Below, piece after piece: positions 27,791 to 64,000 of a DNA stretch of 64,000 bases (positions within the stretch are counted from its first letter, which is position 1; the number at the start of each line of letters is the position of its first letter). The stretch is taken from positions 186,001 through 250,000 of the IMG/VR virus record IMGVR_UViG_3300043399_000877; one strand, 5' to 3'. A program made the translations under genes and the position numbers. The notes below the pieces were generated by a model, which did no database searches, was not told the DNA's origin, and worked only from the letters and a program-made list of their open reading frames with translations.

Positions 27791-27798
27791 TATAAATA
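27791..27798 (+). promoter_or_regulatory. T4-type late promoter TATAAATA
   Basis: Exact consensus 33 nt upstream of the gp6 start. Confidence 0.8.
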
Positions 27799-50714: not shown

Positions 50715-50738
50715 ATAGTTAAAATTTAGGAAAGTTTA

Positions 50739-51629
50739 ATGACTGTCGGATCATTAATTACAGCAGCAAGATATAATGCTATGCAATCAAAAGTTGCAAA
50801 TGTTCTTGGCGTCGGTCAAGAGCAATTTGGCTATGGGCAAATAGTTTCTAGTACACAACTAAGTGTAAGGTCAGTAGTAACTGAGCTAGAAATGCAAAAG
50901 TTAAAAACAGACATTGAAAAAACACATGTGCACCAATTTGGTGCACTACCTTCCGTACCAACCATAACCAACACACAGCTAATAACAAACGCTCAATATA
51001 CTAGTTATGAAACGGCTTCTGAATCTGTTTTAACAAATAAAAACCTAATACATCCCACACAGGCAAGTTTAGAAAACAAAATACAGTCTACTAGATCTTT
51101 ACCGTGGGGAGTTATTACTAGAGACGATACAATAGTTCATCGTGTAAGAGTACAATTTAATTCGACCAACCATGCAAGATATTTTTTTAATGCTGGTGGA
51201 GAAATAAGATTTTCAGCTAATATAGCAAATGGTACAGGATTCAAAACAGCAAACTGGGCAAATACGCTTAACTCTATAGGAACTGTTCGATTTGATTATA
51301 GAAGGACATATGCCGGGAACCTACCTGTCAGAAACATTGGATTTTTTCAATTAACAACAGAATATCAAACAGTGTTTGTTAAAGGTAATACCGATTTATA
51401 TCAAAATCCAACCGATCCTTATGAGAGCAATTACTATATGATAGATGCTCGACTTAGCGACAGCCTAAAAGATATTATTTTTAGAATAACATTTTATGAT
51501 GGTAACTCAAACGAGTACGATGAGTCAGTAAATGGCACACTAACCAGTAGTGTTTCACAGTATCGCCCGACCGGAAATTACGTCGAGGTCGCAACACCCG
51601 GTTATGTAAACGAAGTGCTGTTAGTATAA
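50739..51629 (+). CDS. Virion structural protein
   Basis: ITAARYN, ARYFFNAGGEIRFS motifs; exact TATAAATA at 50710-50717; AGGA SD. Confidence 0.7.
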   Translation: MTVGSLITAARYNAMQSKVANVLGVGQEQFGYGQIVSSTQLSVRSVVTELEMQKLKTDIEKTHVHQFGALPSVPTITNTQLITNAQYTSYETASESVLTNKNLIHPTQASLENKIQSTRSLPWGVITRDDTIVHRVRVQFNSTNHARYFFNAGGEIRFSANIANGTGFKTANWANTLNSIGTVRFDYRRTYAGNLPVRNIGFFQLTTEYQTVFVKGNTDLYQNPTDPYESNYYMIDARLSDSLKDIIFRITFYDGNSNEYDESVNGTLTSSVSQYRPTGNYVEVATPGYVNEVLLV

Positions 51630-51691
51630 CCATATTTGAGAACTAATACGAGTATCCCAGTTATATACTTTGTATAATATGGGATATTTCT

Positions 51692-52039
51692 ATGGACGAA
51701 AATTTAAAAAAAGCTCTTGAGTATAGCAAGTATATGATAACTCTAAATAATCAAAAAAGAGTTATATTAGAACAATACAACGAAAATTTAAATTTTTACT
51801 TTAACGGTGGAAAATTTTTTATTAGCCAGCAATTATTAAGTTTTTGTAAGACTCTATTAGATTGCAATCAAAAATCTGTTGTATTAATAGATGATGATGG
51901 AATCCCCATAGAGATAGCCGACCTAGAATCATTTTTGAAATCTATACTATCTCAGTATTCATCGGTTTCTAACAAATATTTGGCAGAATACCAAAAATTG
52001 GCAAAACAACGAAGTGTGCAGGGAATAGTTAGCTTATGA
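51692..52039 (+). CDS. Hypothetical protein
   Basis: 115-aa ORF coupled to the glycosyltransferase-like genes; YFNGG.F and IDD...PI.I.DL motifs. Confidence 0.7.
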   Translation: MDENLKKALEYSKYMITLNNQKRVILEQYNENLNFYFNGGKFFISQQLLSFCKTLLDCNQKSVVLIDDDGIPIEIADLESFLKSILSQYSSVSNKYLAEYQKLAKQRSVQGIVSL

Positions 52040-52881
52040 GTCGAGGAGTATTACTTATAGCAAATAATAATTCAAATATCGATTATTTGTTGCAAGCTAT
52101 AAATTCTGCAAAACGCATTAAAAAGTATACTAGTTTGCCAGTGACATTGGTGACTGAAACTCCGGAAATATTAAACACTGAGTATAAAAAAGAAAAAAAC
52201 GTTTTCGATAGAGTCATAGCGTTAAAACCAACTTCTGATTATACTAAAAAAATTTATAGAGATGGGGAAAACCAAACAAAATCGTTGGATTTTAAAAATA
52301 CAACTCGTTCTAAAATATACGATCTTACACCATATGATGAAACATTAGCACTAGATACTGACGTGATTATTTCTAATGACAATTTTTTAAAATGTTTTGA
52401 ACAAAAACACGATTTCTTGATTTATAAAAAGTCTTTTGATGTATGCGCCCACAGACATATAAAAGAATTTGATAACATAGTGGATCAAGGCATAGAGTTC
52501 TATTGGGCTACCTGTGTGTTTTTTAGAAAAACTGCAACTAATGAAATATTTTTTAACTTGATAAAGCACATACACGAAAATTACCTGCATTACAAAAATC
52601 TTTATTATGTTACATCGGGAATTTTTAGAAATGACTTTGTTTTCAGTATAGCTATTCATATTATGAATGGTTACCAAAAAGGAGACTTTGCAAAATCTAT
52701 GCCAGGCACTTTGTACTTTTCTTCTGACAAAGACGAGCTTGTGTATTTGAATGACAATCAATTAATTTTGTTACTTGAAAGCACGTCCAATAAGGAACAG
52801 TCAATAGTATCCCTTACAAACGCAAATGTCCATGTAATGAATAAATTTAGTATTGAAAGAATATTAAAAAATGACAGTTAA
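52036..52881 (+). CDS. GT-A fold nucleotide-diphospho-sugar transferase (GT8-like)
   Basis: DY...A..SAKRIK, TPYDETLALDTD (DxD) and FRND..FSIA motifs. Confidence 0.7.
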   Translation: MSRGVLLIANNNSNIDYLLQAINSAKRIKKYTSLPVTLVTETPEILNTEYKKEKNVFDRVIALKPTSDYTKKIYRDGENQTKSLDFKNTTRSKIYDLTPYDETLALDTDVIISNDNFLKCFEQKHDFLIYKKSFDVCAHRHIKEFDNIVDQGIEFYWATCVFFRKTATNEIFFNLIKHIHENYLHYKNLYYVTSGIFRNDFVFSIAIHIMNGYQKGDFAKSMPGTLYFSSDKDELVYLNDNQLILLLESTSNKEQSIVSLTNANVHVMNKFSIERILKNDS

Positions 52882-53707
52882 TTTTACTATGATGGCACAA
52901 AACAGTGATGTTGATTATGTTCAACAAGCAGCAGTTTGTGCTATGAGTATAAAAAACTCAATACCTGATAGCAAAGTATGCCTAATAACCAACGATGTAG
53001 TACCATCCAAATATAAATCATTATTTTCTGATATAGTAGAAATTCCCTGGGAAGATTTTTCAAAAAACAAAACATGGAAAATACAGAACAGATGGAAAAG
53101 TTATCATGCATGCCCATATGAGTCTACTATAATTTTAGACACTGACATGCTTGTTCTAGATGATATAACAAATTGGTGGAATGAATTACAAAAATATGAT
53201 TTGTATTTTGTTTCAGAACCAAAAACTTATAGACAAAACACGGTATCAAGTGTATATTATCGACAGGCGTTTGTAAATCATCAGTTGCCTAATGTTTATA
53301 CTGGATTTCATTTTTTTAAAAAAACGGATTCAGCACACACATTTTATAAATGGTTAGAACTTGTAATGAATAACTGGGAATTATTTCATGGGCAATTTGC
53401 TGGTGGTGCTTATTTTCAAAAATTCTTAAGCATGGATGTTAGTGCTGCTATTGTTACAAAAATATTAGATTGGGAAAGATTTGTGACTTCCAAAAACGGA
53501 CCTTACTTTGTTCATATGAAATCACAATGCCAAGATTGGAATAAGTTTCTCGGAGATTCATGGCAAACATACGTGAAATCTTTTGTTACTGACAATTTAC
53601 AACTTTATGTTGGCAACTATCGGCAATCTGGAGTATTTCACTATACCGAAGACAGCTTTTTAACTCCAAACATAATAAAAAAATATGAAAAGGTGTTGGG
53701 AATATGA
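52871..53707 (+). CDS. GT-A fold nucleotide-diphospho-sugar transferase (GT8-like), paralogue of 52036
   Basis: DY...A...AMSIK, CPYESTIILDTD (DxD), FVHMK and FHY motifs. Confidence 0.7.
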   Translation: MTVNFTMMAQNSDVDYVQQAAVCAMSIKNSIPDSKVCLITNDVVPSKYKSLFSDIVEIPWEDFSKNKTWKIQNRWKSYHACPYESTIILDTDMLVLDDITNWWNELQKYDLYFVSEPKTYRQNTVSSVYYRQAFVNHQLPNVYTGFHFFKKTDSAHTFYKWLELVMNNWELFHGQFAGGAYFQKFLSMDVSAAIVTKILDWERFVTSKNGPYFVHMKSQCQDWNKFLGDSWQTYVKSFVTDNLQLYVGNYRQSGVFHYTEDSFLTPNIIKKYEKVLGI

Positions 53708-54273
53708 CACAAACCTTTACGGTTCCCATGTATGTGCATTTTGATGAAAGTGGAAATGTATTAAAAATAACAAACTATAAATCTGAAGACAGTAGTTATA
53801 TCACAGTTACCTATCATGACGTAGAAAAAATTCTTGATGGTACCGAAACTATGAGTAATTTTTCTGTTAAAAAAGATAGTAGTAATATTTTTAAATTAGT
53901 AAAAAATTTAGCATATGATACAAACAACTATGATGTTGATCAGCGCATATATGCAATTCCTAAAAATAATCCCGGAGCAACTTTAAAAATATATCAGGAT
54001 GTAAAAAATAAAGAATGGATTTTTGACGTTGATCCTGATTTTAGAAAGTCGTATTTTGAAAATCAGTTTATAATTGATAACAGGATGTTTTTTAGTATAA
54101 CTGCAAGCGGTGATCCTAATGTCCTTTATCGATTTGTACAAATTAACTTTGCAGACGTAGTAAAACACAAAAAAGTTTTAAAGTTCATTACAGATGATGA
54201 ACAAAATAAAAATATTGAAATATACACGCATAAGAAAATAGACTCTTATACTCACGAGGTAATAAATGAATAA
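53704..54273 (+). CDS. Hypothetical protein
   Basis: 189-aa ORF coupled on both sides; FSIT..GDPN.LY motif. Confidence 0.7.
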   Translation: MTQTFTVPMYVHFDESGNVLKITNYKSEDSSYITVTYHDVEKILDGTETMSNFSVKKDSSNIFKLVKNLAYDTNNYDVDQRIYAIPKNNPGATLKIYQDVKNKEWIFDVDPDFRKSYFENQFIIDNRMFFSITASGDPNVLYRFVQINFADVVKHKKVLKFITDDEQNKNIEIYTHKKIDSYTHEVINE

Positions 54274-55183
54274 GAAATTTAAAGTTTTAGACTATGATAT
54301 AATATACTTGAGTTACGATGAACCAAATGCTGAAAAGAATTATGCGGATTTACTTAAAAAAGTTCCCTGGGCAAAACGAGTTCACGGTGTTGAGGGGTCT
54401 GATGCTGCACATAAGGCTTGTGCAAATTTAAGCGAAACCGATAGATTTATCACAGTTGACGGTGATAACATAATTCGCAGTGAGTTTTTATCTCAAGAAA
54501 TCGACTTTGATCAACATAAAGATTTGGAAAGTTGTGTTATAAGTTGGACAGCCCGAAATACCATAAACGGATTAATGTATGGAAATGGCGGAATAAAATG
54601 TTGGCCAAAGAAATATGTTTTAAACATGAAAACTCATGAAAATGCTGATCCAAACAATCCACATGCACAAGTTGATTTTTGTTGGGATGTGGAATACATA
54701 CAAATGAACAGTTGTTTTAGTGAAATACACAACAATGCAACGCCACAACAAGCATGGCGCGCTGGTTTTCGTGAAGGCGTTAAAATGGCACTGGATCGTG
54801 GTGTAAAACCTTCTATTGATGTTTTTCATAAAAATCATTGGAAAAATATGCATAGACTTTACATTTGGTTAATGGTTGGGGCAGACGCAGCGAATGGTGA
54901 TTGGGCAATATATGGTGCCCGACAGGGGCTAATTAAAACAATGCTCAGCGATTGGGATTACGTAAATGTTAGGAATTTCAAATGGCTCAACGATTTTTGG
55001 ATTAACGAAGTACAACATGTATCTGATATAAATGCGGATACTATCGAGTTTGGGCATATAATAAAAAACGAGTTGTCGCTGCCCATATCTGAAATGCCAC
55101 TTAACTCAGATCAAAGTAAGTTTTTTAAAACAGTTTACCAAAATCCACCTAGAGTTTCTCAAAAAATAATAGACAAAGAGTAA
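54266..55183 (+). CDS. Glycosyltransferase-like protein (GT-A, DxD)
   Basis: YDIIYLSYDEPNAE.NY, SD.AHKA, RFITVDGDN and AWRAGFREGVK motifs. Confidence 0.65.
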   Translation: MNKKFKVLDYDIIYLSYDEPNAEKNYADLLKKVPWAKRVHGVEGSDAAHKACANLSETDRFITVDGDNIIRSEFLSQEIDFDQHKDLESCVISWTARNTINGLMYGNGGIKCWPKKYVLNMKTHENADPNNPHAQVDFCWDVEYIQMNSCFSEIHNNATPQQAWRAGFREGVKMALDRGVKPSIDVFHKNHWKNMHRLYIWLMVGADAANGDWAIYGARQGLIKTMLSDWDYVNVRNFKWLNDFWINEVQHVSDINADTIEFGHIIKNELSLPISEMPLNSDQSKFFKTVYQNPPRVSQKIIDKE

Positions 55184-55187
55184 TATA

Positions 55188-56723
55188 ATGACTAACATTG
55201 ATAGCACAAATTGGGATAGAAACTCATCCGGTGAAATTATTAGAAATACTGAAAATGTAGAAAAATTAAAACCAATTTTGAATGCAGTTGGTCCGGGATT
55301 TTGTTTGGCAAAATTTACCCAAGTTAGTCTTCACTTGGGCACAGGATTGGTCCATAGTTGCCATCACCCAACACCACATAAGATTCCATTAGATGAACTA
55401 GAAAAAAATCCTGCTGCTTTGTTTAATACTGCTATTTTAAAATCTGCAAGATCAGAAATGTTAACTGGTGGTAAACCGTCTGAATGTGACTATTGTTGGA
55501 GAATTGAAAAAAATGGCGGTACAAGTGACCGGCATCATAAAAGTCTTGAACCCTGGGCATTGGATAACTTTGAAAATGTTATCTCACTTTCTGGTAAGGA
55601 ATTTATAAAACCAACCTACTTGGAAGTCAGCTTTGGTAACACTTGTAATTTAGCGTGTGCGTATTGCGGACCAGAGTTTAGTAGTAAGTGGGTTGAAGAG
55701 TTAAAACAGCAAGGGCCAATAATTATACGTGATTCCGGAAATAGCGATCAATGGGCGCAAGGCTGGCAGGATCTTGAAAATTTGTCATACCTAAATCGAG
55801 AGCATAATCCGTATGTTGAAGCTTTTTGGTCATGGTTTCCTGAAATATACCCAACTTTAAAACACTTTAGGATTACTGGCGGTGAACCGTTATTAAACAA
55901 AAATACTATGAAAAGTTTGGATTATATAATAGAAAATCCTCGTCCAGATCTCGAGTTGAGTATTAACACAAACTTATCGGTACCAGATGCAGTATGGGAT
56001 AGATTCTTAAATAAGATCATAACTCTTGAAAAGTCTTCAAAATTTAAAAAGATAACAATATTTACAAGCTTTGAGGGCTGGGAAGAACGGGCAACCTACA
56101 GTAGGCACGGTCTTGACTTTCAAAAACTTATATCTCGCTTTGAAGAACTTCTTGAAAAAACCGGTGTTCGATGTGTTGTAATGGCAACATATAACATACT
56201 TGCAATAACAAGTTTTCAAAAAGTTCTTGAATGGATCTTAGATCTAAAAGCTCGATTTAATAAAAATCACTATCGCACAGCACTGTATGAAAAAACAGGA
56301 TATGACTTTACAAATTCAGTTAAAAATATAGAAAATAGTTTTAGAGTGGGAATAGACGTTCCATATTTAAGACATCCTGAATGGTTAGATGTAATGTATT
56401 GTTCAGATGAGTTATTTGAAAAATACATGTTTCCAACATACGAGTTCATGGCAAAAAATACTGGGCATACTGAAGTCATGCAACACTATGGTTTTGAACC
56501 AGTTGAAACCAGTAAATTTGAAAGAATTGTTATGAATCGAGCATATTTTTTAAAAAAAGGGTTAGACGACAGTGTTCGAGATGATATTGTTAAAAATAGA
56601 TCAAAATTTTATGATTTTATAAACCAATTAGATTCTAGAAGAAATACTGATTTTGCTAAAACTTATCCAGAAATGGAAAATTTTTATAAATTGTGTAAAG
56701 AAAATAGGAATTTGTTAAAATGA
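55188..56723 (+). CDS. Radical SAM protein with N-terminal auxiliary Fe-S (twitch-like) motifs
   Basis: CNLACAYC (CxxxCxxC), ITGGEPL, INTN; N-terminal CLAK...SCHHP and ECDYCW. Confidence 0.9.
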   Translation: MTNIDSTNWDRNSSGEIIRNTENVEKLKPILNAVGPGFCLAKFTQVSLHLGTGLVHSCHHPTPHKIPLDELEKNPAALFNTAILKSARSEMLTGGKPSECDYCWRIEKNGGTSDRHHKSLEPWALDNFENVISLSGKEFIKPTYLEVSFGNTCNLACAYCGPEFSSKWVEELKQQGPIIIRDSGNSDQWAQGWQDLENLSYLNREHNPYVEAFWSWFPEIYPTLKHFRITGGEPLLNKNTMKSLDYIIENPRPDLELSINTNLSVPDAVWDRFLNKIITLEKSSKFKKITIFTSFEGWEERATYSRHGLDFQKLISRFEELLEKTGVRCVVMATYNILAITSFQKVLEWILDLKARFNKNHYRTALYEKTGYDFTNSVKNIENSFRVGIDVPYLRHPEWLDVMYCSDELFEKYMFPTYEFMAKNTGHTEVMQHYGFEPVETSKFERIVMNRAYFLKKGLDDSVRDDIVKNRSKFYDFINQLDSRRNTDFAKTYPEMENFYKLCKENRNLLK

Positions 56724-57916
56724 AAATACCTATGTACTTTGACTTTATTCAAAATGACGGAAATATAGAAAAGTTAAATGCAGTTGATATCACAATAAGT
56801 AAAAAATGTGCTGAGGGAAGCAATGCCTTAACAATGTTAGAAATTCAAGATCCTAAATCTGAAATAGAATTTATAAAAGAAAATTATTCAGGGTTTTTTT
56901 ATTATCCTATTTATTGGGTTTATAATGACATATATTTGAAATCTTTAACAATTCCAAAATTTGTGTTAAATGCAATTTCTAAAAATAAAGCGAAGATATT
57001 AATAGTTAACCTGTATGAGGGTTACGATATTTCAAATGCAGTTCGAGAGAATGTGTTATTAAAATTTAGTTTATCATTTGAAAATATTGTGCTTATGACT
57101 GGAAATAAATTTAAAATAGACGGGATAAACTCGATATACAATAATTATTGGGAACACATAGCGTCTTATGGGAACAAGTCACCGAGTAGTCTGTTTAACA
57201 AAGCACATAATTCAATATTTACTAAGAATAACTACCGGAAACACAAATTTATTTGCCTTCAAAGAAGACCAAAGCCATATCGTGTTGCATTATATTCTGA
57301 ATTATTTCCATATCGAGATATGGGAATTTTAACTTTAGGTCGTGGTGATTATGGAACCCACACATATAACAGATTTTATGATATAAATTTGTTTGGTGAC
57401 TCTTTCAAAGATAGCCATAAAAAATTTAAAAAAAACAAGTTGATATCAACGTTGCCCGCTGTGTATGATGTAGATGTTTCTTTAGAAAATCCTGCTTTTG
57501 ACGACGACGATGAAAAGTTTTATTCAGCATATCTGCATATAGTTTCTGAAACTTTTTTTGAAAAAGATACTAATACAACATTTTTTAGTGAAAAAGTATT
57601 CAAACCAATAGTATGTTTTCAACCATTTATAATGTTTAACCAGCACAATACTTTGGAAGAGTTTCGTTCGTTGGGATATGAAACTTTTCCTGACGTCATT
57701 GATGAAGCATATGACAAAATTCAAGATGATGAAAAAAGATTTTACACAGCGGTATCGTCAACTATTAATTTTATAAACCAAAACAACAAAACACTTTCTA
57801 AAATAATGAAAAAATTATTTCCAGTAATGGCACATAATTTTTACAATTTATTTTACACGGCTAATACAAAACAGGCTAAAATAAAAGCTGAACTGATATC
57901 TTTATTATATAACTAA
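56720..57916 (+). CDS. Putative GT-B glycosyltransferase (ET.F..SEK..KP family)
   Basis: HIVSETFF...FSEKVFKPI...QPF...L..LGYETF..VIDEAYD. Confidence 0.55.
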   Translation: MKIPMYFDFIQNDGNIEKLNAVDITISKKCAEGSNALTMLEIQDPKSEIEFIKENYSGFFYYPIYWVYNDIYLKSLTIPKFVLNAISKNKAKILIVNLYEGYDISNAVRENVLLKFSLSFENIVLMTGNKFKIDGINSIYNNYWEHIASYGNKSPSSLFNKAHNSIFTKNNYRKHKFICLQRRPKPYRVALYSELFPYRDMGILTLGRGDYGTHTYNRFYDINLFGDSFKDSHKKFKKNKLISTLPAVYDVDVSLENPAFDDDDEKFYSAYLHIVSETFFEKDTNTTFFSEKVFKPIVCFQPFIMFNQHNTLEEFRSLGYETFPDVIDEAYDKIQDDEKRFYTAVSSTINFINQNNKTLSKIMKKLFPVMAHNFYNLFYTANTKQAKIKAELISLLYN

Positions 57917-59104
57917 TTTTTTAAAAAAATATTTTGGTATGTTTTTTATGTGTCGACGGTTATGCAATAGGATGTCATTCATTTCAAAAAGAATTTTTTC
58001 TAAATCTTCTAGGTCATGCGACAAAATTTTTTGAATTAAACTATAAACCATGGCAAATCTTATGTTATGTTTTTTTTCGTCGTCATATGATTCGTCCCAC
58101 CATTTATCAAAGGTTTTAAATCCCATATGTTTGAGAAGGGCTAAGGTGTGTGGTGGGCCGAGAATTATAAACGGTCTGTTAACCATCATAGGTTTCAATG
58201 TTTTTTCACTTATGTATTGGATTGGCGTGCAAAATCTAGTTTCAGTTACTAAATTTACAAAACTGCGTTCAGTTAAGTTGTATATAGAATTGATATTTTG
58301 TGTTAATCCATTTAGATTTGTTCTAAGATTGTGCTGTTTAACAATGGAGCCATCGTCATCTACAAAAGTTATTGGTTCTGAATCATACTTTTTTATTTGA
58401 TCCAACAAATTAGATTTAAATGGATCTTTATATTTGTTAAAATTAATATAAGGATTTTTAAGAATAGCCGAATACTTATATTTGTTTGAATTAGTCAAAA
58501 ACACTCCGGCTTTATCAAATAACAGTGCAGACATCAGGTGTCGTTGCCAATCTCTTCTATGATTAAAACAAGTTACTTTATAGTCTAATGGAAGTTTTTG
58601 TACATAATTTTCATTTTTTTTAAAATAAACCCAATCATTTAAGTAAACATCGAAATAATTAATTTTATATTTAAATTTTTTAAGAAGTTTTTTTGGTATT
58701 CTCTCGCAGTGAAAAATTTTAAAATCTGATATTTTTGTTTGATTTAAAATGATTTCAATTAATCCTAATTCTAAAAAAATAGTATTCTCAAAATCTTTTT
58801 CTATAGTATGAGTATCCATTAAGTTTACAGACTGATCTGTTTTATGCCGTATTCTAAATACATCATCTATAAAAAAGTAAATTTTAGTTATATTGGATTG
58901 CACGAGCTCGTCTATAACATGCTGATAATATTTGTATTCTTGATTTAAGATTAAAATTGCAGATTGATGATTGCTATTAATTGATAATGATTTTTTTAAA
59001 TCTCTTATTAGTTTGTTGTTGTATACAATTGGTTTTTTATCTTTTTTTCCTGAATGGTATGTGAATCTTTTATTGTGGGTGATTAATACCATGTTTGGAA
59101 ACAT
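57905..59104 (-). CDS. Putative GT-B glycosyltransferase (ET.F..SEK..KP family)
   Basis: NLVTETRF...ISEKTLKPM..RPFIILG...GFKTFDKWWDESYD. Confidence 0.55.
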   Translation of the reverse strand: MFPNMVLITHNKRFTYHSGKKDKKPIVYNNKLIRDLKKSLSINSNHQSAILILNQEYKYYQHVIDELVQSNITKIYFFIDDVFRIRHKTDQSVNLMDTHTIEKDFENTIFLELGLIEIILNQTKISDFKIFHCERIPKKLLKKFKYKINYFDVYLNDWVYFKKNENYVQKLPLDYKVTCFNHRRDWQRHLMSALLFDKAGVFLTNSNKYKYSAILKNPYINFNKYKDPFKSNLLDQIKKYDSEPITFVDDDGSIVKQHNLRTNLNGLTQNINSIYNLTERSFVNLVTETRFCTPIQYISEKTLKPMMVNRPFIILGPPHTLALLKHMGFKTFDKWWDESYDDEKKHNIRFAMVYSLIQKILSHDLEDLEKILFEMNDILLHNRRHIKNIPKYFFKKLVI

Positions 59105-59652
59105 TATAGAATTCCTGTTATTTGCAATGTATAACGGTTATGTGGTCCTAGGTTAGCAGCCATATGTGGTACGTCGTAATTCCAGAGTACATAGTCGCCA
59201 GATTTATAGTTATATATTGGCACACCGTCTATTTCAAATATATGCCCCGGCTGCCAATCTTCTAAAAATACCAGAGCTCGATAAATCTTACTTGCATCTT
59301 CTATTTTATTATATTTTATAAATTTTACATATGCATCTTTATGATATGGTAATATTGTTCCCGGCTTCATTCTATAAAAACTACTACCAGATTTTTGCAA
59401 TCCCACTTCTTTAACAATTTGTGCAGTCCATTCTGGTTGAATTCCACGATAATCTACCATTTCGCCAGTGTCGTATATTTTACCATATACGCGATTCCAT
59501 TCTTCAACAGCAGCTGGGTCGTTAAATGGTTCTTTGATATATGACAACTTTTTAAAACTATCATCGATAATATCTGGTTTGATTTTTCCCAGTTTCCAAA
59601 CGGTCTTCTCAATAATTAACATTATTCTCTCTCCAAGTCCAAAGTTACACAA
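59104..59652 (-). CDS. 2-oxoglutarate/Fe(II) oxygenase-like protein (cupin fold)
   Basis: M.PG..LPYHKD (HxD), distal H in VPHMAAN and RYTLQITG; the true start may be about 59616. Confidence 0.75.
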   Translation of the reverse strand: MCNFGLGERIMLIIEKTVWKLGKIKPDIIDDSFKKLSYIKEPFNDPAAVEEWNRVYGKIYDTGEMVDYRGIQPEWTAQIVKEVGLQKSGSSFYRMKPGTILPYHKDAYVKFIKYNKIEDASKIYRALVFLEDWQPGHIFEIDGVPIYNYKSGDYVLWNYDVPHMAANLGPHNRYTLQITGIL

Positions 59653-60536
59653 TGATGCCCTCCCCCGAGAGTTCTACTGTGCCTAAGATTTATACCGATA
59701 CTTTCTACATTATATTTTTCCAGTTTTTTTCTTAATATATTTTGATTTGGGTCGCAAATTATTAAATTTGAATTAACAGTCAAAAAATTAAGTGCGATAT
59801 ATTTACTTGCATATGGATATCCAACAAAACCCTGTGGAATTATGTCATCTCCTGACATCCAAATAATATCCCAATTTTCAAAAACCTGTGGTAAATTCTT
59901 TTCCGATATTCGATCTTGATTTATTACTACTAAACCTTCGCGTATGGGAGATATAGTGCTATCGATGTGTACCCCGCTGTATATATTGTCTAATATATGA
60001 ACCTTGTATGAATCCCCAAGCGTTTCTTGAAGCCATTCCCCGCCTGTACGGTTTCCACTGCTACTTACCAAATACAGCAGATCTTTTCCAAGTCTGCATA
60101 CGTTAGCTGCGTCAAAAAAAGCATTTTGGTTATCGCAAGACACTGTTTTGGGTAAAAACTTTTTTAGTGCGTCTATTTCTGGCAATCTTGTGGGATAAAC
60201 CATTGGGGCATCTATAGCAACATCACCCACTATTAGTACACGATCTCTTGGGCAGTAGTTGTACATCCCATCAAAGTTTTTAAAATCTAAAATTTCTGGT
60301 CTTACAACATTTACACCTAGCTTTTCTAGTGTATTTGTTAAATTTTCTAAATCTTCATTTGCTTCTGAAATTATAAATTCTGATACCGGGCCAGCCGGCA
60401 GCGGGGTCTCCTGCCACAAGGAAGTTTTTTCTAAAGACCTAAATTTTTCGCAGTTAACTGGCCAATGTGCGTTTGTTGCACTCCCGACTACTATTTTTTT
60501 TAAAACGCCCCATTCGTTTTGAGAATATATCATCAA
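59622..60536 (-). CDS. Amidinotransferase (glycine / inosamine-phosphate amidinotransferase family)
   Basis: NEWG.LK..VVG, YCPRD, FDAAN (Asp), HIDST (His) and GGGHHCVTLD (Cys) catalytic motifs. Confidence 0.9.
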   Translation of the reverse strand: MMIYSQNEWGVLKKIVVGSATNAHWPVNCEKFRSLEKTSLWQETPLPAGPVSEFIISEANEDLENLTNTLEKLGVNVVRPEILDFKNFDGMYNYCPRDRVLIVGDVAIDAPMVYPTRLPEIDALKKFLPKTVSCDNQNAFFDAANVCRLGKDLLYLVSSSGNRTGGEWLQETLGDSYKVHILDNIYSGVHIDSTISPIREGLVVINQDRISEKNLPQVFENWDIIWMSGDDIIPQGFVGYPYASKYIALNFLTVNSNLIICDPNQNILRKKLEKYNVESIGINLRHSRTLGGGHHCVTLDLERE

Positions 60537-60590
60537 TTACCTTTTTATAAAATGATACAAAATGTATAATTATTTTCAATAAATATTGAC

Positions 60591-61565
60591 ATGATTGTAA
60601 ATGGATCACATCTTATAGGTTATTTATCAGACAAATTTACTGTATTTGATCTCTATGGTTATGACTTGTCGGTCTTTGACATTGACTCTATTAAACAAAA
60701 TAGCGTTGTATACGTAGATGATGAAATGATGTGTTTTAATCGTATGTTGCGCGTGTTTTTAAATTTAATAAAAGATAGAGATGACATAGTTTGGGTAGTC
60801 AAAATACCTTTTGTGTATGAAAAAATTATTAGTCTCGGTAAACGTGCAGTATTAGAACCTTATTTTCATATTATAGATGACCTCATGGGAATGAAAATTC
60901 AAAATGAACCTAGGGTAATTCCCATATACGGAGATAAAACATTTTTTTGTTTGAACAGAAATTTCAACGATCAACGACAAACATTATTAAAACAATTAAA
61001 AAAACATGATTTAATAAAATTTGGATATGTAACAGCAAACTCTGAAAGATTTAAAGATAGACATTTATTCGTGTGTGATCCCATGGATAACTATGTTGCG
61101 TCCACGTCTGGCTACGAGCGATGTAATGAAACAGACCTAATCTCATTAAATGTTAAAAATTTTTATAATATAGCAGCTAAACCAGGACAAATAGCAGTGG
61201 TTGTTGAGACCGGTTATTACCCATTGGAATACAAAAGGTTTTTCCCTACAGAAAAAACAATAATTCCGTTTATAACACACCGATTGCCTTTGATACACGG
61301 TGACTCCGGCATCCTTCGTAATTTAGAAAAGGATGGTATCGACATATTTAGAGATTTAATTAACCACTCCTATGATTTAATGGAATACCACGATCCCAAA
61401 AAGTCTAAAAAAATGATCAAAGATAACATTGAAATATTAAAAAACGGAGTTAACATACAAAAATTACAAAAACGATTAAAAAGAAATTATGATTTTTTAA
61501 CAAATCAGTGGTTTGAAGTCAAGTTGCAAAACTTTATAACTAATATTTCACAAAATCTCGATTAA
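60591..61565 (+). CDS. Putative GT-B glycosyltransferase (ET...TEK family), divergent
   Basis: CLNRN....R..L, VVETGY...FPTEKTIIPF and DIF.DLINHSYD motifs; TAAATA at 60580-60585 just before the ATG. Confidence 0.5.
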   Translation: MIVNGSHLIGYLSDKFTVFDLYGYDLSVFDIDSIKQNSVVYVDDEMMCFNRMLRVFLNLIKDRDDIVWVVKIPFVYEKIISLGKRAVLEPYFHIIDDLMGMKIQNEPRVIPIYGDKTFFCLNRNFNDQRQTLLKQLKKHDLIKFGYVTANSERFKDRHLFVCDPMDNYVASTSGYERCNETDLISLNVKNFYNIAAKPGQIAVVVETGYYPLEYKRFFPTEKTIIPFITHRLPLIHGDSGILRNLEKDGIDIFRDLINHSYDLMEYHDPKKSKKMIKDNIEILKNGVNIQKLQKRLKRNYDFLTNQWFEVKLQNFITNISQNLD

Positions 61566-62168
61566 TCTGCAATCAGGATATATTACTTTTTTTGATTGAA
61601 ACTTTCCGGTTTTTTTGTATCGTTTTAATGCCCTAGAGCCCCTGACACACTCTTCTGGATTTAGCTTATAATGATAACCCAACGTAAAACTTTTTTGATT
61701 TTGCCAAGGGAGTATGCTTAAATCTCGCCCGTCATATCTTAATTTTGACAAAACACAATAGTCATCGTACGAGTCAGTTAATATAGCACCACCACGGCCA
61801 ATATCAACTGGTTTTCCGTATCCAAAACTCAAGCATTGTAATTGGCCAGCCTTATACATATTTGGTTCAAGTTTTCTTGCACTATCCCAAATTCTGGTAT
61901 TATAAAACTGATACTCGCCAACCCATTCTTCGTCTATCAAATTATATGATATTTTTAGTTTATGCATAAGTTGGGGTATGCTTAAATATGTATATGCTGT
62001 AAAATGACAATCTTTTATGTTATCAAGTATCATACACAATTCTATTGCGTGAGTACAGCAATCGGTTGATACGGCATATTTTGCACCAGAAAACTCAGCA
62101 AGTTCATCTTCAAATTTTTTAATTTTTTCAAACATACCATATTTAATACCATAAAATAACACAGTCAT
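61548..62168 (-). CDS. Truncated DegT/DnrJ/EryC1/StrS-family PLP aminotransferase
   Basis: FE.ELAEFSGAKYAV..D.CT.AI, WDSAR and LSFGYGK...GRGGAILTD (Schiff-base Lys); only about 200 aa; real start probably at MFEKIKK. Confidence 0.8.
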   Translation of the reverse strand: MTVLFYGIKYGMFEKIKKFEDELAEFSGAKYAVSTDCCTHAIELCMILDNIKDCHFTAYTYLSIPQLMHKLKISYNLIDEEWVGEYQFYNTRIWDSARKLEPNMYKAGQLQCLSFGYGKPVDIGRGGAILTDSYDDYCVLSKLRYDGRDLSILPWQNQKSFTLGYHYKLNPEECVRGSRALKRYKKTGKFQSKKVIYPDCRLIEIL

Positions 62169-62174
62169 AAATAA

Positions 62175-63419
62175 ATGAAAAGGATTTTACACATGGATAT
62201 AGGGTTTATAGGTCTTGGAAAATTAGGCAAGGCCTGTGCAGAAGTTATTGCAAAAAAAGGATATAATGTAGCTGGTTATGATATAGCGCCGGTTACTAGC
62301 GAAGTTGTGGCAGTAAAAAACACCATTAAAGACTGTGTGACTGACCGCGATATAGTATTTGTTGCAGTACCTACACCACATAGTCCAGAATACGATGGTA
62401 GATATCCTACAATGCATTTGCCGCCTAAAGATTTTGATTATTCTATTGTAAAGTCGGTGATAACAGAAGCCACCAGTCACATGAATAAAAATCAAATACT
62501 GGTGTTAATATCAACAGTGCTTCCCGGAACAGTTCGTAGAGAATTTCAACAATTAGTAAAAAATGTAAAATTCGTGTACAACCCATATTTAATTGCAATG
62601 GGGTCTGTCGAGTGGGACATGGTAAATCCAGAGATGGTTATTATTGGAACTGACCACGGGTCGATTACTGATGAAGCTGCGGATCTTATTGATTTTTACA
62701 AAAATATTATGGAAAATGACCCGAAGTACCATGTTGGGACCTGGGACGAAGCAGAATGTATAAAGATTTTTTATAATACATGGATTAGCACTAAAATCGG
62801 GCTTTCTAATATGATAATGGATGTATCAGAAAGACTTGGAAATATAAATGTAGATATAGTAACAACTGCACTGTCACAAGCATCAATGCGCATTACTGGC
62901 CCGCAGTACATGAAAGCTGGTATGGGCGACGGCGGCGCATGTCATCCACGTGACAACATTGCATTGCGTTATTTGGCAAAAGAGCTTGATTTAAAGTACG
63001 ATCTTTTTGACGCCATTATGGGCGCCAGAGAACAACAAGCGTTTAATTTAGCAAATGAGTTAGTAACACACTCACAAAAAAATGGCTATCCAATTTATAT
63101 TCATGGTAAAGCATATAAGCCAAAAGTTTCATATGAAGATGGTAGTTACAGTATTTTGATTGGTGAATATTGTAAAAAATTAGGTGTTGAGCCCAGCTAT
63201 ATTGATCCGTTGACTGGTGACAACAACGTTCCTGTTGGTCCCTGTGTTATTCTGTTGGCCCATTCGCCAAGCACTACCTACAAATATACTAGACAAAACA
63301 ATACTGATGTGTTATATTGTGAAATACCCGATGGCAGTATCGTAGTTGATCCATGGAGATCTTATTATAATGATAGCTGCACAGTTATTCATTATGGAAA
63401 CACTCGAAAAGATGTATGA
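62175..63419 (+). CDS. ugd: UDP-glucose/GDP-mannose dehydrogenase family protein
   Basis: GFIGLGKLG Rossmann motif, VFVAVPTP, ISTV.PGT, K..YN...STKI and GMGDGGACHPRD (catalytic Cys). The start is probably ATG 62193, since late promoter 62168-62173 and SD AAGGA precede it. Confidence 0.9.
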   Translation: MKRILHMDIGFIGLGKLGKACAEVIAKKGYNVAGYDIAPVTSEVVAVKNTIKDCVTDRDIVFVAVPTPHSPEYDGRYPTMHLPPKDFDYSIVKSVITEATSHMNKNQILVLISTVLPGTVRREFQQLVKNVKFVYNPYLIAMGSVEWDMVNPEMVIIGTDHGSITDEAADLIDFYKNIMENDPKYHVGTWDEAECIKIFYNTWISTKIGLSNMIMDVSERLGNINVDIVTTALSQASMRITGPQYMKAGMGDGGACHPRDNIALRYLAKELDLKYDLFDAIMGAREQQAFNLANELVTHSQKNGYPIYIHGKAYKPKVSYEDGSYSILIGEYCKKLGVEPSYIDPLTGDNNVPVGPCVILLAHSPSTTYKYTRQNNTDVLYCEIPDGSIVVDPWRSYYNDSCTVIHYGNTRKDV

Positions 63420-64000
63420 TATTTTTTATGTAAGTGAACACGCTCCTTCAGAAGAATACCGTAAGTTAAAACAACGATTCCCTTTTACAAAACTTGTAGC
63501 ATCGTTTGATGATGCAAGGCAACAGTCACTTACTGACTTTTTTTGGGTAGTATGGGACGACTTGATCCCTCTTGAAACTTTTAACTTTGACTACGCCCCA
63601 GATGAGTGGAGCAAGAATTATATTCACTTATTTTTAAATTCGGAACATTATGATGGTATTTCGTTAATTCCAAAACATGCGCAAATAACCAATAAAGAAA
63701 TACAGCATAGATTTTTTATAAATCATAAAAAGGTTGAAATAATTGCAAGTATGCCCAAACCTTTTGACGTGTTTGTAATTGAAGACTACTCAGAGTACGA
63801 ACTTGCTTTTGAAACAACTACGACAGAAATGTTTTGGATGGTTAGTAATAACTTAACATATGACCATCAATTTGTTGAATCTTTCTATATAAGTCATCAC
63901 AACAGGTATGATAGAAATGAAAACCATGCCTTTGTACACGAAGCAAACGAGCAACGATTATACAATGGTATTTTTTTATTATCAAAGAATAAAAAAATAA
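63412..64000 (+). CDS. Glycosyltransferase-like protein (paralogue of 54266), truncated by the window edge
   Basis: Not in the ORF track. Hand translation of the 5' part: MYDIFYVSEHAPSEEYRKLKQRFPFTKLVASFDDARQQSLTDFFWVVWDD...; ATG overlaps the ugd stop. Confidence 0.7.
   Translation, partial: MYDIFYVSEHAPSEEYRKLKQRFPFTKLVASFDDARQQSLTDFFWVVWDDLIPLETFNFDYAPDEWSKNYIHLFLNSEHYDGISLIPKHAQITNKEIQHRFFINHKKVEIIASMPKPFDVFVIEDYSEYELAFETTTTEMFWMVSNNLTYDHQFVESFYISHHNRYDRNENHAFVHEANEQRLYNGIFLLSKNKKI

What the first reader, a model, noticed from the sequence alone, without database searches (positions are those of the whole stretch)
59104..63419. Phage-encoded amidino/amino-sugar pathway resembling streptidine chemistry
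Within about 4 kb lie an NDP-sugar dehydrogenase, a DegT-family PLP aminotransferase, an amidinotransferase with an intact Asp-His-Cys triad and a 2OG-Fe oxygenase, flanked by glycosyltransferase-like genes. In streptomycin biosynthesis, oxidation, DegT-type transamination and StrB1 amidino transfer yield a guanidinylated cyclitol. The same enzyme classes here could make a guanidino (cationic) sugar for decorating the virion or DNA, which would be an undescribed phage modification. The enzyme classes are seen in the sequence; the product is inferred.
Basis: partly seen in the sequence, partly recalled or inferred. Interest (0 to 1): 0.8.

Follow-up and report, generated by a model that had tools for sequence, protein, structure and literature searches.

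The report
Phage glycan cassette with amidinotransferase
A jumbo T4-like phage from fresh water carries a tightly linked set of sugar-modifying genes, shared by many uncultured phages and built around a streptomycin-type amidinotransferase; it may make a positively charged (guanidino) sugar, but neither the product nor its target is known.

Summary
At 59104-63419 lie a UDP-glucose/GDP-mannose-family dehydrogenase with its catalytic Cys, a half-size DegT-like protein that keeps the PLP lysine, an amidinotransferase whose closest solved relative is StrB1 (205 bits, against 116 for glycine amidinotransferase), and a small 2OG/Fe(II) oxygenase (HxD...H...R motif; model matches only 2OG dioxygenases). 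Three paralogous GT-B-fold proteins flank or interrupt them. Just outside lie a twitch radical-SAM enzyme and possible GT2-like proteins.

This is not chance. Of 79 related viral loci, 71 carry the dehydrogenase, 74 the oxygenase and 70 the GT-B protein beside the amidinotransferase, on at least two unrelated phage backbones.

The streptidine analogy holds only in part:
- The dehydrogenase makes a uronic acid, not a ketone.
- No inositol dehydrogenase or kinase was recognised.
- The viral amidinotransferases form their own clade apart from StrB1 orthologues.
- Half of the loci lack the DegT-like gene.

My best reading is a virus-borne nucleotide-sugar tailoring and transfer pathway with an arginine-dependent amidination step. 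Product and acceptor are unresolved. Similar modules were noted, unexplained, in Campylobacter phages (2010) and cyanophage S-SCSM2R (2025).

The parts
62175..63419 (+). NDP-sugar 6-dehydrogenase (UDP-glucose/GDP-mannose dehydrogenase family), 414 aa, catalytic Cys kept
   Evidence: Pfam and PHROG hits. NCBIfam TIGR03026 scores 146 bits, below its cut-off. PDB alignment shows the motif GGACHPRD. Present beside the amidinotransferase in 71 of 79 viral loci.
61548..62168 (-). Half-size DegT-like PLP protein ('mini-DegT'), 206 aa
   Evidence: Pfam DegT 3.5e-12. Invariant K119 and D95; aligned with perosamine synthetase and WbpE over two blocks only; the N-terminal ~35 aa and the C-terminal domain are missing. 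Found in 31 of 79 viral loci, always next to the amidinotransferase.
60591..61565 (+). GT-B-family paralogue (p324), on the opposite strand between mini-DegT and amidinotransferase
   Evidence: hmmsearch with the p398/p399 family profile gives 3.9e-14. In related loci this slot holds a ~220-aa GDSL/SGNH-like protein instead.
59622..60536 (-). L-arginine-type amidinotransferase, StrB1-like, 304 aa
   Evidence: PDB phmmer: StrB1 9e-60, AGAT 2e-32. Catalytic and donor-binding positions are invariant. More than 7140 metagenomic relatives, 449 IMG/VR stretches. The viral sequences form a clade with SH-aLRT 98.
59104..59622 (-). Small Fe(II)/2-oxoglutarate oxygenase (double-stranded beta-helix), 172 aa; its start overlaps the amidinotransferase stop by 1 nt
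   Evidence: Invariant HxD...H...R motif. ESM Atlas structural matches to 2OG-FeII_Oxy_3/5 clusters. AF2 model pLDDT 92.6; best PDB matches are bacterial prolyl-4-hydroxylase, AsqJ and FtmOx1. Found in 74 of 79 viral loci with a median gap of 0 bp to the amidinotransferase.
57905..59104 (-). GT-B-fold glycosyltransferase-like protein (p399); its start overlaps the oxygenase stop by 1 nt
   Evidence: AF2 model pLDDT 84. Foldseek and VIA-align: T4 beta-glucosyltransferase Z 12.2, exostosin 10.9, FUT13 9.6. Other GT-B enzymes match in AFDB. The family is found in 70 of 79 loci. BFVD contains a fusion of this fold with a UDP-glucose dehydrogenase.
56720..57916 (+). GT-B-family paralogue (p398)
   Evidence: Family profile 9e-84. 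Syntenic homologues in related loci.
55188..56723 (+). Twitch-domain radical SAM enzyme, 511 aa, CxxxCxxC at residue 153
   Evidence: NCBIfam NF033640 scores 311 bits against a cut-off of 170. Pfam Radical_SAM. Motif located. Homologues in about 30 of 79 loci.
54266..55183 (+). Possible GT-A (GT2-like) glycosyltransferase (p305); paralogue of the C-terminal part of the ORF that starts at 63416
   Evidence: 67-72% identical in related loci. ESM Atlas clusters are named 'Glycosyltransferase 2-like'. A conserved DGD motif and only a weak match (E 0.33) to a GT2 structure. This is a lead, not a finding.
50739..54273 (+). Five conserved ORFs of unknown function (296, 115, 281, 278 and 189 aa), syntenic with the cassette in a subset of relatives
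   Evidence: blastp synteny with L005/L006/L010/L011/L017. No Pfam hit. The 281- and 278-aa proteins are paralogues.
50710..50717 (+). T4-type late-promoter-like TATAAATA, 22 bp before the ORF at 50739
   Evidence: One of only two exact matches in the window; the other lies 34 bp before the baseplate gene at 27832. Weak evidence.
63416..64000 (+). Start of a ~650-aa ORF that runs past the window end; its C-terminal part is a paralogue of p305. Two more radical SAM genes follow beyond the window.
   Evidence: L002 ORFs. The 36% paralogy to p305 comes from blastp. These radical SAM proteins are about 25% identical to those of Campylobacter phage CP220.

Best explanation
The region is a phage-borne pathway that tailors a nucleotide sugar and transfers it.

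Shown:
- The enzyme families.
- Their catalytic residues.
- Their tight, translationally coupled linkage.
- Their co-inheritance across many phages.

Inferred, step by step:
1. The dehydrogenase oxidises a host NDP-hexose to an NDP-uronic acid.
2. The 2OG oxygenase oxidises a ring carbon to a ketone, possibly with loss of the carboxylate as in ArnA chemistry. In some lineages an SDR sits in the same gene position; the twitch radical SAM enzyme may act likewise, in the manner of BtrN.
3. The mini-DegT aminates the ketone.
4. The StrB1-like amidinotransferase moves an amidino group from L-arginine to that amine and gives a guanidino sugar.
5. The GT-B-fold paralogues, and possibly GT2-like proteins, transfer the sugar or sugars to an acceptor.

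The acceptor is unresolved. No cassette protein has a membrane segment, so a soluble or particle-bound target such as a virion protein seems somewhat more likely than a lipid-linked host glycan. DNA is possible.
For: - Enzyme identities and catalytic residues.
- Linkage: of 79 viral loci holding the amidinotransferase, 71 have the dehydrogenase, 74 the oxygenase and 70 the GT-B protein. Median gaps are 0 to about 1.6 kb, and most absences lie at contig ends.
- Backbones: the core block occurs on T4-like genomes and on genomes with ClpX, Hsp20, UvdE and Pol III alpha neighbours.
- In the window, the amidinotransferase, oxygenase and p399 ORFs overlap by 1 nt each.
- In many loci the gene order is dehydrogenase, oxygenase, mini-DegT, amidinotransferase, which is the order of the proposed steps.
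- In Bdellovibrio sp. HCB2-146 the overlapping ORFs run dehydrogenase, SDR epimerase/dehydratase, mini-DegT. The amidinotransferase, three radical SAM genes and a GT-B homologue lie nearby. The SDR sits where phages have the oxygenase.
- Fusions tie the GT-B fold to NDP-sugar chemistry: with a UDP-glucose dehydrogenase, with an NDP-sugar epimerase/dehydratase and with a methyltransferase, and with a GDSL esterase.
- The donor-binding positions of StrB1/AGAT are invariant, so arginine is the likely donor (residue roles from my knowledge of the AGAT and StrB1 structures).
- No transmembrane segments.
Against: - No product is known.
- About half of the viral loci (those with an amidinotransferase 47-52% identical to the window's) have dehydrogenase, oxygenase and amidinotransferase but no mini-DegT or other aminotransferase within 9 kb. 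Either the amine comes from elsewhere or the acceptor is not an amino sugar made in the cassette.
- The mini-DegT lacks the whole C-terminal domain of DegT enzymes, so its activity is uncertain.
- The oxygenase's nearest structures are a protein prolyl hydroxylase and small-molecule oxygenases, not sugar enzymes.
- Cellular relatives of the amidinotransferase sit in heterogeneous contexts, including radical SAM/SPASM with ABC transporters, which look peptide-related.
- The dehydrogenase's substrate cannot be read from its sequence (below the NCBIfam cut-offs).
Confidence: 0.45

Rival explanations
1. The amidinotransferase and the oxygenase work on a non-sugar amine. Candidates are lysine or ornithine (free or in a protein or peptide), glycine, or a polyamine. 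The products would be, for example, homoarginine or an amidino-polyamine, which the oxygenase then hydroxylates. The dehydrogenase and the glycosyltransferases would then build a separate glycan or glycosylate the hydroxylated product.
For: - Characterised relatives act on glycine (AGAT, CyrA), lysine (AmtA) and other non-sugar amines, and acceptor use is flexible (PMC4887976).
- The mini-DegT is missing in half of the loci, while the oxygenase-amidinotransferase pair is constant.
- S-SCSM2R has a second, distant amidinotransferase that is also next to a 2OG oxygenase.
- The oxygenase's best structural match is a protein prolyl-4-hydroxylase.
- Several cellular homologues sit with radical SAM/SPASM enzymes and ABC transporters.
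Against: - The dehydrogenase and the GT-B protein are as constant as the oxygenase and are often translationally coupled to it.
- Where mini-DegT occurs, it is always adjacent to the amidinotransferase.
- Fusions link the GT-B fold to the dehydrogenase.
- StrB1, the nearest solved relative, uses an aminocyclitol.
Confidence: 0.22
2. The cassette hypermodifies phage DNA. The oxygenase would oxidise a base in the manner of TET/JBP enzymes. A GT-B enzyme like T4 beta-glucosyltransferase would add a uronic-acid-derived sugar, which would then be made cationic by amidination.
For: - The best solved match of p399 is T4 DNA beta-glucosyltransferase (Z 12.2).
- The window's p399 is very basic (net +18).
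- The phage is T4-like.
- All cassette proteins are soluble.
- Phages are known to combine 2OG dioxygenases and glycosyltransferases in DNA modification (abstracts listed).
Against: - The margin over other GT-B enzymes is small (12.2 against 10.9), and AFDB matches are ordinary lipid- and protein-directed GT-B enzymes.
- The GT-B family is otherwise acidic, net -5 to -19.
- The oxygenase shows no TET/JBP or AlkB match among its 50 best hits.
- No hydroxymethylase, DNA methyltransferase or nucleotide kinase was seen in the window or the flanks examined.
- Five or more glycosyltransferase-like genes suggest an oligosaccharide rather than a base adduct.
Confidence: 0.1
3. The genes make a diffusible aminoglycoside-like secondary metabolite. 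This is the 'antibiotic synthesis genes' reading given for S-SCSM2R.
For: - The enzyme classes (amidinotransferase, DegT-like protein, twitch radical SAM as in BtrN, glycosyltransferases) recall aminoglycoside pathways. The authors of PMC12801897 propose this reading.
Against: - No inositol-phosphate synthase, 2-deoxy-scyllo-inosose synthase, inositol dehydrogenase, kinase, exporter or resistance gene was recognised.
- The viral amidinotransferases are not StrB1 orthologues.
- A lytic phage has little time to profit from a secreted antibiotic (inference).
Confidence: 0.07
4. The gene neighbourhood is a chance mosaic of unrelated auxiliary genes or an assembly artefact.
For: - The genes alternate between strands in the window.
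- Consensus promoter scans are not above chance.
Against: - The co-occurrence across 79 loci and two genome backbones.
- The 1-nt ORF overlaps.
- The invariant catalytic residues.
- The stretch lies in one contig at even depth, and near-identical pieces occur in other samples.
Confidence: 0.02

Closest known systems
StrB1, L-arginine:inosamine-phosphate amidinotransferase of Streptomyces griseus (PDB 1BWD)
   Same: It is the best solved relative (205 bits, E 9e-60). The Cys-His-Asp catalytic residues and the arginine-binding positions are conserved. The residues before the catalytic His resemble StrB1 (LYAST-H against IYSGV-H) more than AGAT.
   Different: The viral protein is about 45 aa shorter: a segment of roughly 30 residues (StrB1 139-171) is missing. 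The viral proteins form a separate clade (SH-aLRT 98), whereas true StrB1-like proteins score 432 bits to 1BWD. The gene context has no streptidine genes.
Ugd-ArnA-ArnB route to UDP-4-amino-4-deoxy-L-arabinose (lipid A modification)
   Same: The logic is the same: a UDP-glucose dehydrogenase, then oxidation to a 4-keto sugar, then a DegT-family aminotransferase that gives a cationic sugar for transfer. ArnB is among the PDB matches of the mini-DegT. The Bdellovibrio cluster has dehydrogenase, SDR and mini-DegT in that order.
   Different: In the phages a 2OG oxygenase, not an SDR, sits between the dehydrogenase and the mini-DegT. There is an added amidinotransferase. There is no formyltransferase, no ArnC/ArnT-type membrane transferase and no membrane protein at all. 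The comparison rests on my knowledge of the Arn pathway.
Radical SAM plus amidinotransferase module of Campylobacter phages CP220 and CPt10 (Timms et al. 2010, PMC2853527)
   Same: These are T4-like phages. Their module has an amidinotransferase, several radical SAM genes and two nucleotide-sugar transferases. Its radical SAM proteins are about 25% identical to the two encoded just beyond the window end. Its function is also unknown.
   Different: Its amidinotransferase is only 25% identical and lies in the other half of the tree. No dehydrogenase, mini-DegT, GT-B family member or homologous oxygenase was found there.
Synechococcus phage S-SCSM2R ORF305-309 (BMC Biol 2025, PMC12801897)
   Same: It holds homologues of the mini-DegT (37%), the oxygenase (32%) and the amidinotransferase (38%), together with a radical SAM gene and five glycosyltransferases. 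It is the only cultured phage found with this trio.
   Different: Its dehydrogenase lies 35 kb away in another glycosyltransferase cluster. The GT-B family of the window is absent. The authors call the genes 'antibiotic synthesis genes' without a test.
T4 DNA beta-glucosyltransferase (GT-B fold)
   Same: It is the best structural match of p399 (Z 12.2 over about 275 residues), it is of similar size, and it is a phage enzyme.
   Different: Identity is 10-12%. The margin over exostosin, POGLUT2 and FUT13 is small. The family is mostly acidic. The conserved E-T...S-E-K...P motif recalls GT10 fucosyltransferases, but hhalign against a GT10 protein was not significant.
BtrN/BtrS of butirosin biosynthesis (twitch radical SAM dehydrogenase plus DegT-type aminotransferase)
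   Same: In both, a twitch-domain radical SAM enzyme neighbours a DegT-like protein. The idea of an oxidation-amination pair comes from my knowledge of that pathway.
   Different: The resemblance is a lead only.

Membership tests
Amidinotransferase family (AGAT/StrB1 branch of the guanidino-group-modifying superfamily) | Significant full-length sequence similarity to characterised members | tested here: met
   StrB1 9e-60, AGAT 2e-32, SxtG 1e-28, HsvA 3e-26, each over two blocks covering residues 3-303. Pfam and NCBIfam models do not detect it.
Amidinotransferase family (AGAT/StrB1 branch of the guanidino-group-modifying superfamily) | Catalytic Cys-His-Asp and the residues that hold the arginine donor | tested here: met
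   D98, D142, H190, D192, R209, S244 and C296 align to StrB1 D108, D179, H227, D229, R246, S280 and C332. They are invariant in 10 diverse viral sequences.
StrB1 orthologues (inosamine-phosphate specificity) | Groups with StrB1 in a tree | tested here: not met
   The viral sequences form their own clade of 37 rows (SH-aLRT 98). The StrB1 proxy (an Actinomycetota protein scoring 432 bits to 1BWD) lies in a different clade. The deep branching is unresolved.
StrB1 orthologues (inosamine-phosphate specificity) | Amidination of an aminocyclitol phosphate | not testable with these tools
   This needs an enzyme assay.
Streptidine pathway | myo-inositol dehydrogenase, inosamine kinase and phosphatase beside the aminotransferase and amidinotransferase | tested here: not met
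   No such family appears among the Pfam, NCBIfam or PHROG hits of the 20 neighbouring ORFs. The only dehydrogenase is of the UDP-glucose 6-dehydrogenase family.
DegT/DnrJ/EryC1/StrS aminotransferases | Pfam PF01041 match above the gathering score | tested here: met
   46.7 bits against a cut-off of 19.8, but only profile positions 23-74 in the best stretch. A profile search of PDB finds 35 DegT-type enzymes.
DegT/DnrJ/EryC1/StrS aminotransferases | PLP-binding lysine and the Asp that binds the pyridine nitrogen | tested here: met
   K119 and D95 are invariant in 15 sequences. The block holding K119 aligns to the perosamine synthetase block that holds its PLP lysine.
DegT/DnrJ/EryC1/StrS aminotransferases | Two-domain architecture of about 360-400 residues | tested here: not met
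   All homologues are 191-222 aa. The N-terminal ~35 residues, about 40 residues of the large domain and the whole C-terminal domain are absent.
UDP-glucose/GDP-mannose 6-dehydrogenases | NAD-binding and central domains with the catalytic Cys | tested here: met
   PF03721 and PF00984; the motif GGACHPRD aligns to GGSCFPKD.
UDP-glucose/GDP-mannose 6-dehydrogenases | Substrate-specific subfamily (equivalog) | tested here: inconclusive
   All NCBIfam scores lie far below their cut-offs (TIGR03026 146 against 190; AglM 98 against 670).
Fe(II)/2-oxoglutarate oxygenases | HxD/E...H iron triad, and a basic residue about 10 positions after the second His for 2OG | tested here: met
   H94, D96, H153 and R163 are invariant in 20 sequences.
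Fe(II)/2-oxoglutarate oxygenases | Double-stranded beta-helix fold | tested here: met
   Model pLDDT 92.6. It has 253 PDB matches at E<=0.001, and the 50 best are all 2OG dioxygenases. The Pfam sequence hit is below its cut-off.
GT-B glycosyltransferases | Two Rossmann-like domains (GT-B fold) | tested here: met
   Z 12.2-9.2 to six different GT-B families. AFDB and BFVD matches are glycosyltransferases.
GT-B glycosyltransferases | Membership of a named CAZy/Pfam family (GT10 was considered) | tested here: not met
   No Pfam, PHROG or NCBIfam hit. hhalign against a GT10 protein gives probability 0.07, aligned only at the S-E-K motif.
T4-type DNA glucosyltransferases | DNA as acceptor | tested here: inconclusive
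   T4 beta-glucosyltransferase is the best structural match but by a small margin. Family members are mostly acidic. No base-hydroxymethylating enzyme was seen in the DNA examined.

The most novel reading that the evidence does not exclude
Hundreds of phage lineages share a virus-specific route to a guanidino (permanently cationic) sugar. The route would run by uronic-acid formation, 2OG-dependent or radical oxidation, amination by a minimal PLP domain, and arginine-dependent amidination. The sugar would then be attached by a previously unnamed GT-B family to virion proteins or DNA. This would be the first guanidinylated glycan outside aminoglycoside antibiotics and a new kind of phage particle or genome decoration.
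Probability: 0.3. Interest if true: 0.85.

Novelty: new variant of a known kind. Interest (0 to 1): 0.62.

Why it matters
Phage-encoded sugar pathways are known: glucosyl and arabinosyl DNA, glycosylated mycobacteriophage virions, giant-virus fibril glycans. None of them contains an amidinotransferase.

This cassette is abundant. It has more than 7000 metagenomic relatives and 449 IMG/VR stretches, but only about 30 species-level cellular genomes carry a relative. It moves between unrelated phage backbones and has had no assigned function since related modules were first noticed in 2010.

Its components also have interest of their own:
- a 200-residue DegT-like domain that keeps the PLP lysine;
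- an unnamed GT-B family;
- a small 2OG oxygenase sitting where an SDR sits in a bacterial version.

These are candidates for new enzyme chemistry. If the product is a cationic glycan, it could affect adsorption, particle stability, DNA packaging or evasion of host defences. That would give a concrete biochemical handle on a large block of 'dark' genes in aquatic phages.

Tried and rejected
- Pfam, NCBIfam and PHROG searches did not name the amidinotransferase beyond an unnamed PHROG. They found nothing for the three GT-B paralogues or for the ORFs at 49200-54273.
- A tree with named reference sequences could not be built. Cluster names were automatic and uninformative. I did not type StrB1 or AGAT from memory. 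Instead, clades were labelled by PDB scores of three members.
- The GT10 relationship suggested by a motif and by an ESM Atlas lead was tested with hhalign and was not significant.
- DNA as the acceptor was considered because of the T4 beta-glucosyltransferase match. It was weakened by the acidic charge of the family, by the ordinary GT-B matches in AFDB and by the lack of TET/JBP-like matches for the oxygenase.
- A Pfam census of genes around 19 cellular homologues showed no common context.
- A census around 16 phage loci without mini-DegT found no aminotransferase.
- Timing of expression was not settled. One T4-type late-promoter motif lies before the + strand block at 50739. A sigma-70-like site lies before the amidinotransferase, but such sites are no more frequent than chance.
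- The second S-SCSM2R oxygenase (ORF267) is not detectably related to the cassette oxygenase.
- The radical SAM enzyme has no solved relative by sequence.
- No RNA run holding the stretch was found, so there is no transcript evidence.
For that reason the mini-DegT and the amidinotransferase were not modelled.

Full report
**What the window is**

The window carries T4-type genes for the major head protein, portal, SbcC-like nuclease and baseplate wedge. It also carries a 4522-aa ORF. The capsid protein is 69-72% identical to those of jumbo myoviruses: Vibrio phage 2.275.O, Serratia phage BF, Yersinia phage fHe-Yen9-04 and Sinorhizobium phage Phosso.

The window lies in IMG/VR contig UViG_3300043399_000877, which is 381,886 bp long. 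The stretch 57900-63500 stands whole in one 78-kb contig of a freshwater metagenome, the probable source. Near-identical pieces occur in retting and aquaculture metagenomes, and a diverged colinear relative occurs in an estuary run. So this is a real phage locus, not an assembly chimera.

**The observation**

- The dehydrogenase (62175-63419, +) has the NAD-binding and central domains of the UDP-glucose/GDP-mannose dehydrogenase family. It keeps the catalytic cysteine motif. It falls below every subfamily cut-off, so its substrate is open.
- The 'DegT' (61548-62168, -) passes the Pfam cut-off but has only 206 residues. In 15 homologues of 191-222 aa, Lys119 and Asp95 are invariant. The Lys block aligns to the perosamine synthetase block that holds its PLP lysine. 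The N-terminal 35 residues and the whole C-terminal domain of DegT enzymes are missing. It is a conserved half-size family, not a broken gene.
- The amidinotransferase (59622-60536, -) is invisible to Pfam and NCBIfam. It matches StrB1 at 9e-60 (205 bits), against 116 bits for AGAT, 103 for SxtG and 95 for HsvA. The residues aligned to the catalytic and donor-binding positions of StrB1 are invariant.
- The small protein at 59104-59622 (-) has an invariant HxD...H...R motif. Its AF2 model (pLDDT 92.6) matches only Fe(II)/2OG dioxygenases among its 50 best PDB hits, led by a bacterial prolyl-4-hydroxylase.
- The ORF at 57905-59104 (-) has no sequence-family hit. Its model (pLDDT 84) is a GT-B fold: Z 12.2 to T4 beta-glucosyltransferase, 10.9 to exostosin and 9.6 to a fucosyltransferase. 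The ORFs at 56720-57916 (+) and 60591-61565 (+) are paralogues.

**The surroundings**

- Upstream on the + strand lie a twitch-domain radical SAM enzyme (NF033640, 311 bits) and a 305-aa protein. The nearest ESM Atlas clusters of that protein are named GT2-like. It has a conserved DGD motif, but only a weak match (E 0.33) to a solved GT2 enzyme.
- Five conserved ORFs of unknown function precede them.
- Downstream, an ORF that starts at 63416 runs out of the window. Its C-terminal part is a paralogue of the 305-aa protein. Two more radical SAM genes follow.
- None of these proteins has a membrane segment.
- The amidinotransferase, oxygenase and GT-B ORFs overlap by one base each, which fits translational coupling.

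**Is the linkage more than chance?**

The amidinotransferase has over 7140 relatives at E<=1e-10 in metagenomes and 449 confirmed stretches in IMG/VR. Only 32 hits were found in one-genome-per-species bacterial and archaeal genomes, and none exceeded 52% identity.

In the 79 best viral loci other than the window, counts are as follows:

| Partner | Loci with it (of 79) |
|---|---|
| Dehydrogenase | 71 |
| 2OG oxygenase | 74 |
| GT-B family | 70 |
| mini-DegT | 31 |
| Homologue of the twitch radical SAM enzyme | 30 |

Most absences are at contig ends. The oxygenase and the mini-DegT are typically adjacent to the amidinotransferase.

Two architectures exist:
- Relatives with an amidinotransferase at least 53% identical to the window's usually carry mini-DegT and radical SAM genes. 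Their order is either dehydrogenase, oxygenase, mini-DegT, amidinotransferase, or dehydrogenase, mini-DegT, a GDSL-like protein, amidinotransferase, oxygenase.
- Relatives at 47-52% identity have a compact block of GT-B, dehydrogenase, oxygenase and amidinotransferase. It is set among ClpX, Hsp20, UvdE, PstS and Pol III alpha genes, which is a different genome backbone, and there is no aminotransferase within 9 kb.

The survey covers only the 80 best of 449 stretches, so it leans towards close relatives.

**Relatives with a name**

- The only cultured phage with the trio is Synechococcus phage S-SCSM2R, with mini-DegT at 37%, oxygenase at 32% and amidinotransferase at 38% identity. The genes sit among five glycosyltransferases and a radical SAM gene. 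Its authors call them antibiotic synthesis genes without a test. A second, distant amidinotransferase in that phage also sits next to a 2OG oxygenase, beside KdsA and KdsB. The paper reports it in the virion proteome.
- Campylobacter phages CP220 and CPt10 carry a module of five radical SAM genes, an amidinotransferase and two nucleotide-sugar transferases. It was noted in 2010 as unexplained. Its radical SAM proteins are distantly related to those just past the window end.
- A Bdellovibrio genome has overlapping ORFs for a dehydrogenase, an SDR epimerase/dehydratase and a mini-DegT. The amidinotransferase, three radical SAM genes and a GT-B homologue lie nearby.
- Other cellular homologues have no common context.

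**Phylogeny**

In a tree of 154 sequences, the window and both viral architectures form one clade (SH-aLRT 98). S-SCSM2R ORF309 and the Bdellovibrio protein lie in a neighbouring clade. A StrB1 proxy (432 bits to 1BWD) lies in a separate cellular clade. The CP220 protein lies in the other half of the tree. The deep branches are unresolved.

The answer to 'StrB1 or glycine amidinotransferase?' is that the protein is nearer to StrB1 but is not its orthologue. Acceptor use in this family is flexible (PMC4887976), so the acceptor cannot be inferred from kinship.

**How it most likely works**

The constant partners are an NDP-sugar dehydrogenase and a GT-B protein. Fusions join this GT-B fold to a UDP-glucose dehydrogenase, to an NDP-sugar epimerase/dehydratase and a methyltransferase, and to a GDSL esterase. 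This ties the cassette to nucleotide-sugar chemistry.

A 6-dehydrogenase with its Cys should make a uronic acid (my knowledge of the family). It therefore cannot be the ketone-forming step of the streptidine analogy. The oxygenase occupies the gene position that an SDR holds in the Bdellovibrio cluster, between the dehydrogenase and the mini-DegT.

I therefore infer this sequence:
1. uronic acid;
2. keto sugar, perhaps with decarboxylation as in ArnA;
3. amino sugar;
4. guanidino sugar;
5. transfer by the GT-B proteins.

The twitch radical SAM enzyme may offer a second, oxygen-independent oxidation, as BtrN does in butirosin biosynthesis. That is a recalled resemblance and was not tested. All steps after the assignment of enzyme families are inference.

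The main weakness is the compact architecture without mini-DegT. Either the amine comes from elsewhere, or the acceptor is a pre-existing amine.

**The acceptor**

- DNA is suggested by the T4 beta-glucosyltransferase match and by the basic charge of the window's p399 (+18). But the family is otherwise acidic, the margin over other GT-B enzymes is small, the AFDB matches are ordinary GT-B enzymes, and the oxygenase shows no TET/JBP-like match.
- The cassette has no membrane proteins. An exact T4-type late-promoter motif lies before the + strand block, and it is one of only two in the window. Several glycosyltransferase-like genes are present. Together these lean weakly towards an oligosaccharide on a soluble or virion target.
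- This question is not settled.

**Novelty and verdict**

The literature held here contains no functional assignment. The modules were noticed twice but not explained.

The cassette is best described as a new variant of phage-encoded glycan biosynthesis, with an unprecedented amidination step and several unnamed enzyme families.

Noticed in passing
window 31230-44798 (+): A single 4522-aa ORF sits between the baseplate genes and the glycan island. It has no collagen-like G-X-Y runs. It could be a fibre or adhesin and a candidate acceptor for glycosylation.
   Followed up: partly
L017:4102-7702 (-) and L005:6570-8702 (-): In related phages the dehydrogenase gene is 710 aa long and is followed by a separate 205-aa dehydrogenase fragment. 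It has a large insert between the NAD and central domains. It also has a weak Intein_splicing match (E 3e-4, below the cut-off) that begins right after the catalytic-Cys motif. This looks like intein or homing-element invasion of the dehydrogenase.
   Followed up: partly
L007:9343-10017, L005:9364-10023, L037:9903-11936: A ~220-aa protein with an N-terminal GDS motif (GDSL/SGNH-like; Pfam 8e-5 in a fused form) lies between mini-DegT and the amidinotransferase in many relatives. In some it is fused to the GT-B protein. In the window this slot holds the GT-B paralogue p324 on the other strand.
   Followed up: partly
L121:28354-31337 (Synechococcus phage S-SCSM2R ORF266-269): A second, very distant amidinotransferase overlaps a 2OG oxygenase gene and lies next to KdsA and KdsB. 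The published virion proteome lists this amidinotransferase and the 2OG oxygenase ORF269. That oxygenase family is not detectably related to the cassette's.
   Followed up: partly
L089 and L090 (two contigs of one Haliscomenobacter MAG): Both contigs carry the compact GT-B, dehydrogenase, oxygenase, amidinotransferase block, with amidinotransferases 52% and 44% identical to the window's. They fall inside the viral clade. They are either binned phage contigs or prophages, and could hint at a host.
   Followed up: no
L049-L088, downstream of the amidinotransferase: In 13 of the 16 compact-architecture loci sampled, a UvdE UV-damage endonuclease gene lies in the flank, downstream of the amidinotransferase where checked. 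A conserved 263-aa protein with metallophosphoesterase-like motifs lies beside the GT-B gene.
   Followed up: no
window 57905-59104 (-): The window's p399 has net charge +18, whereas 27 of 29 other family members range from -19 to +4 (the other two, +9 and the window's paralogue p398 at +3, included). The reason is unknown.
   Followed up: partly
window 27791-27798 and 50710-50717: TATAAATA occurs only twice in 64 kb, against 8 expected by chance. Both copies lie 22-34 bp before gene starts. NATAAATA variants precede several structural genes. This fits a T4-type late promoter that is avoided elsewhere.
   Followed up: partly
L097:10161-11135 (-) (Bdellovibrio) and L121:12146-12997 (S-SCSM2R ORF242): PP-loop ATPase-like genes (SGGxDS motif; annotated 'NAD(+) synthase' in the phage) sit next to the dehydrogenase clusters. 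They could amidate a uronic-acid carboxylate. No such gene was found in the window.
   Followed up: no
window 1-64000: No tRNA genes in the window. G+C falls from about 0.42 in the head-gene region to 0.29-0.35 in the glycan island.
   Followed up: no
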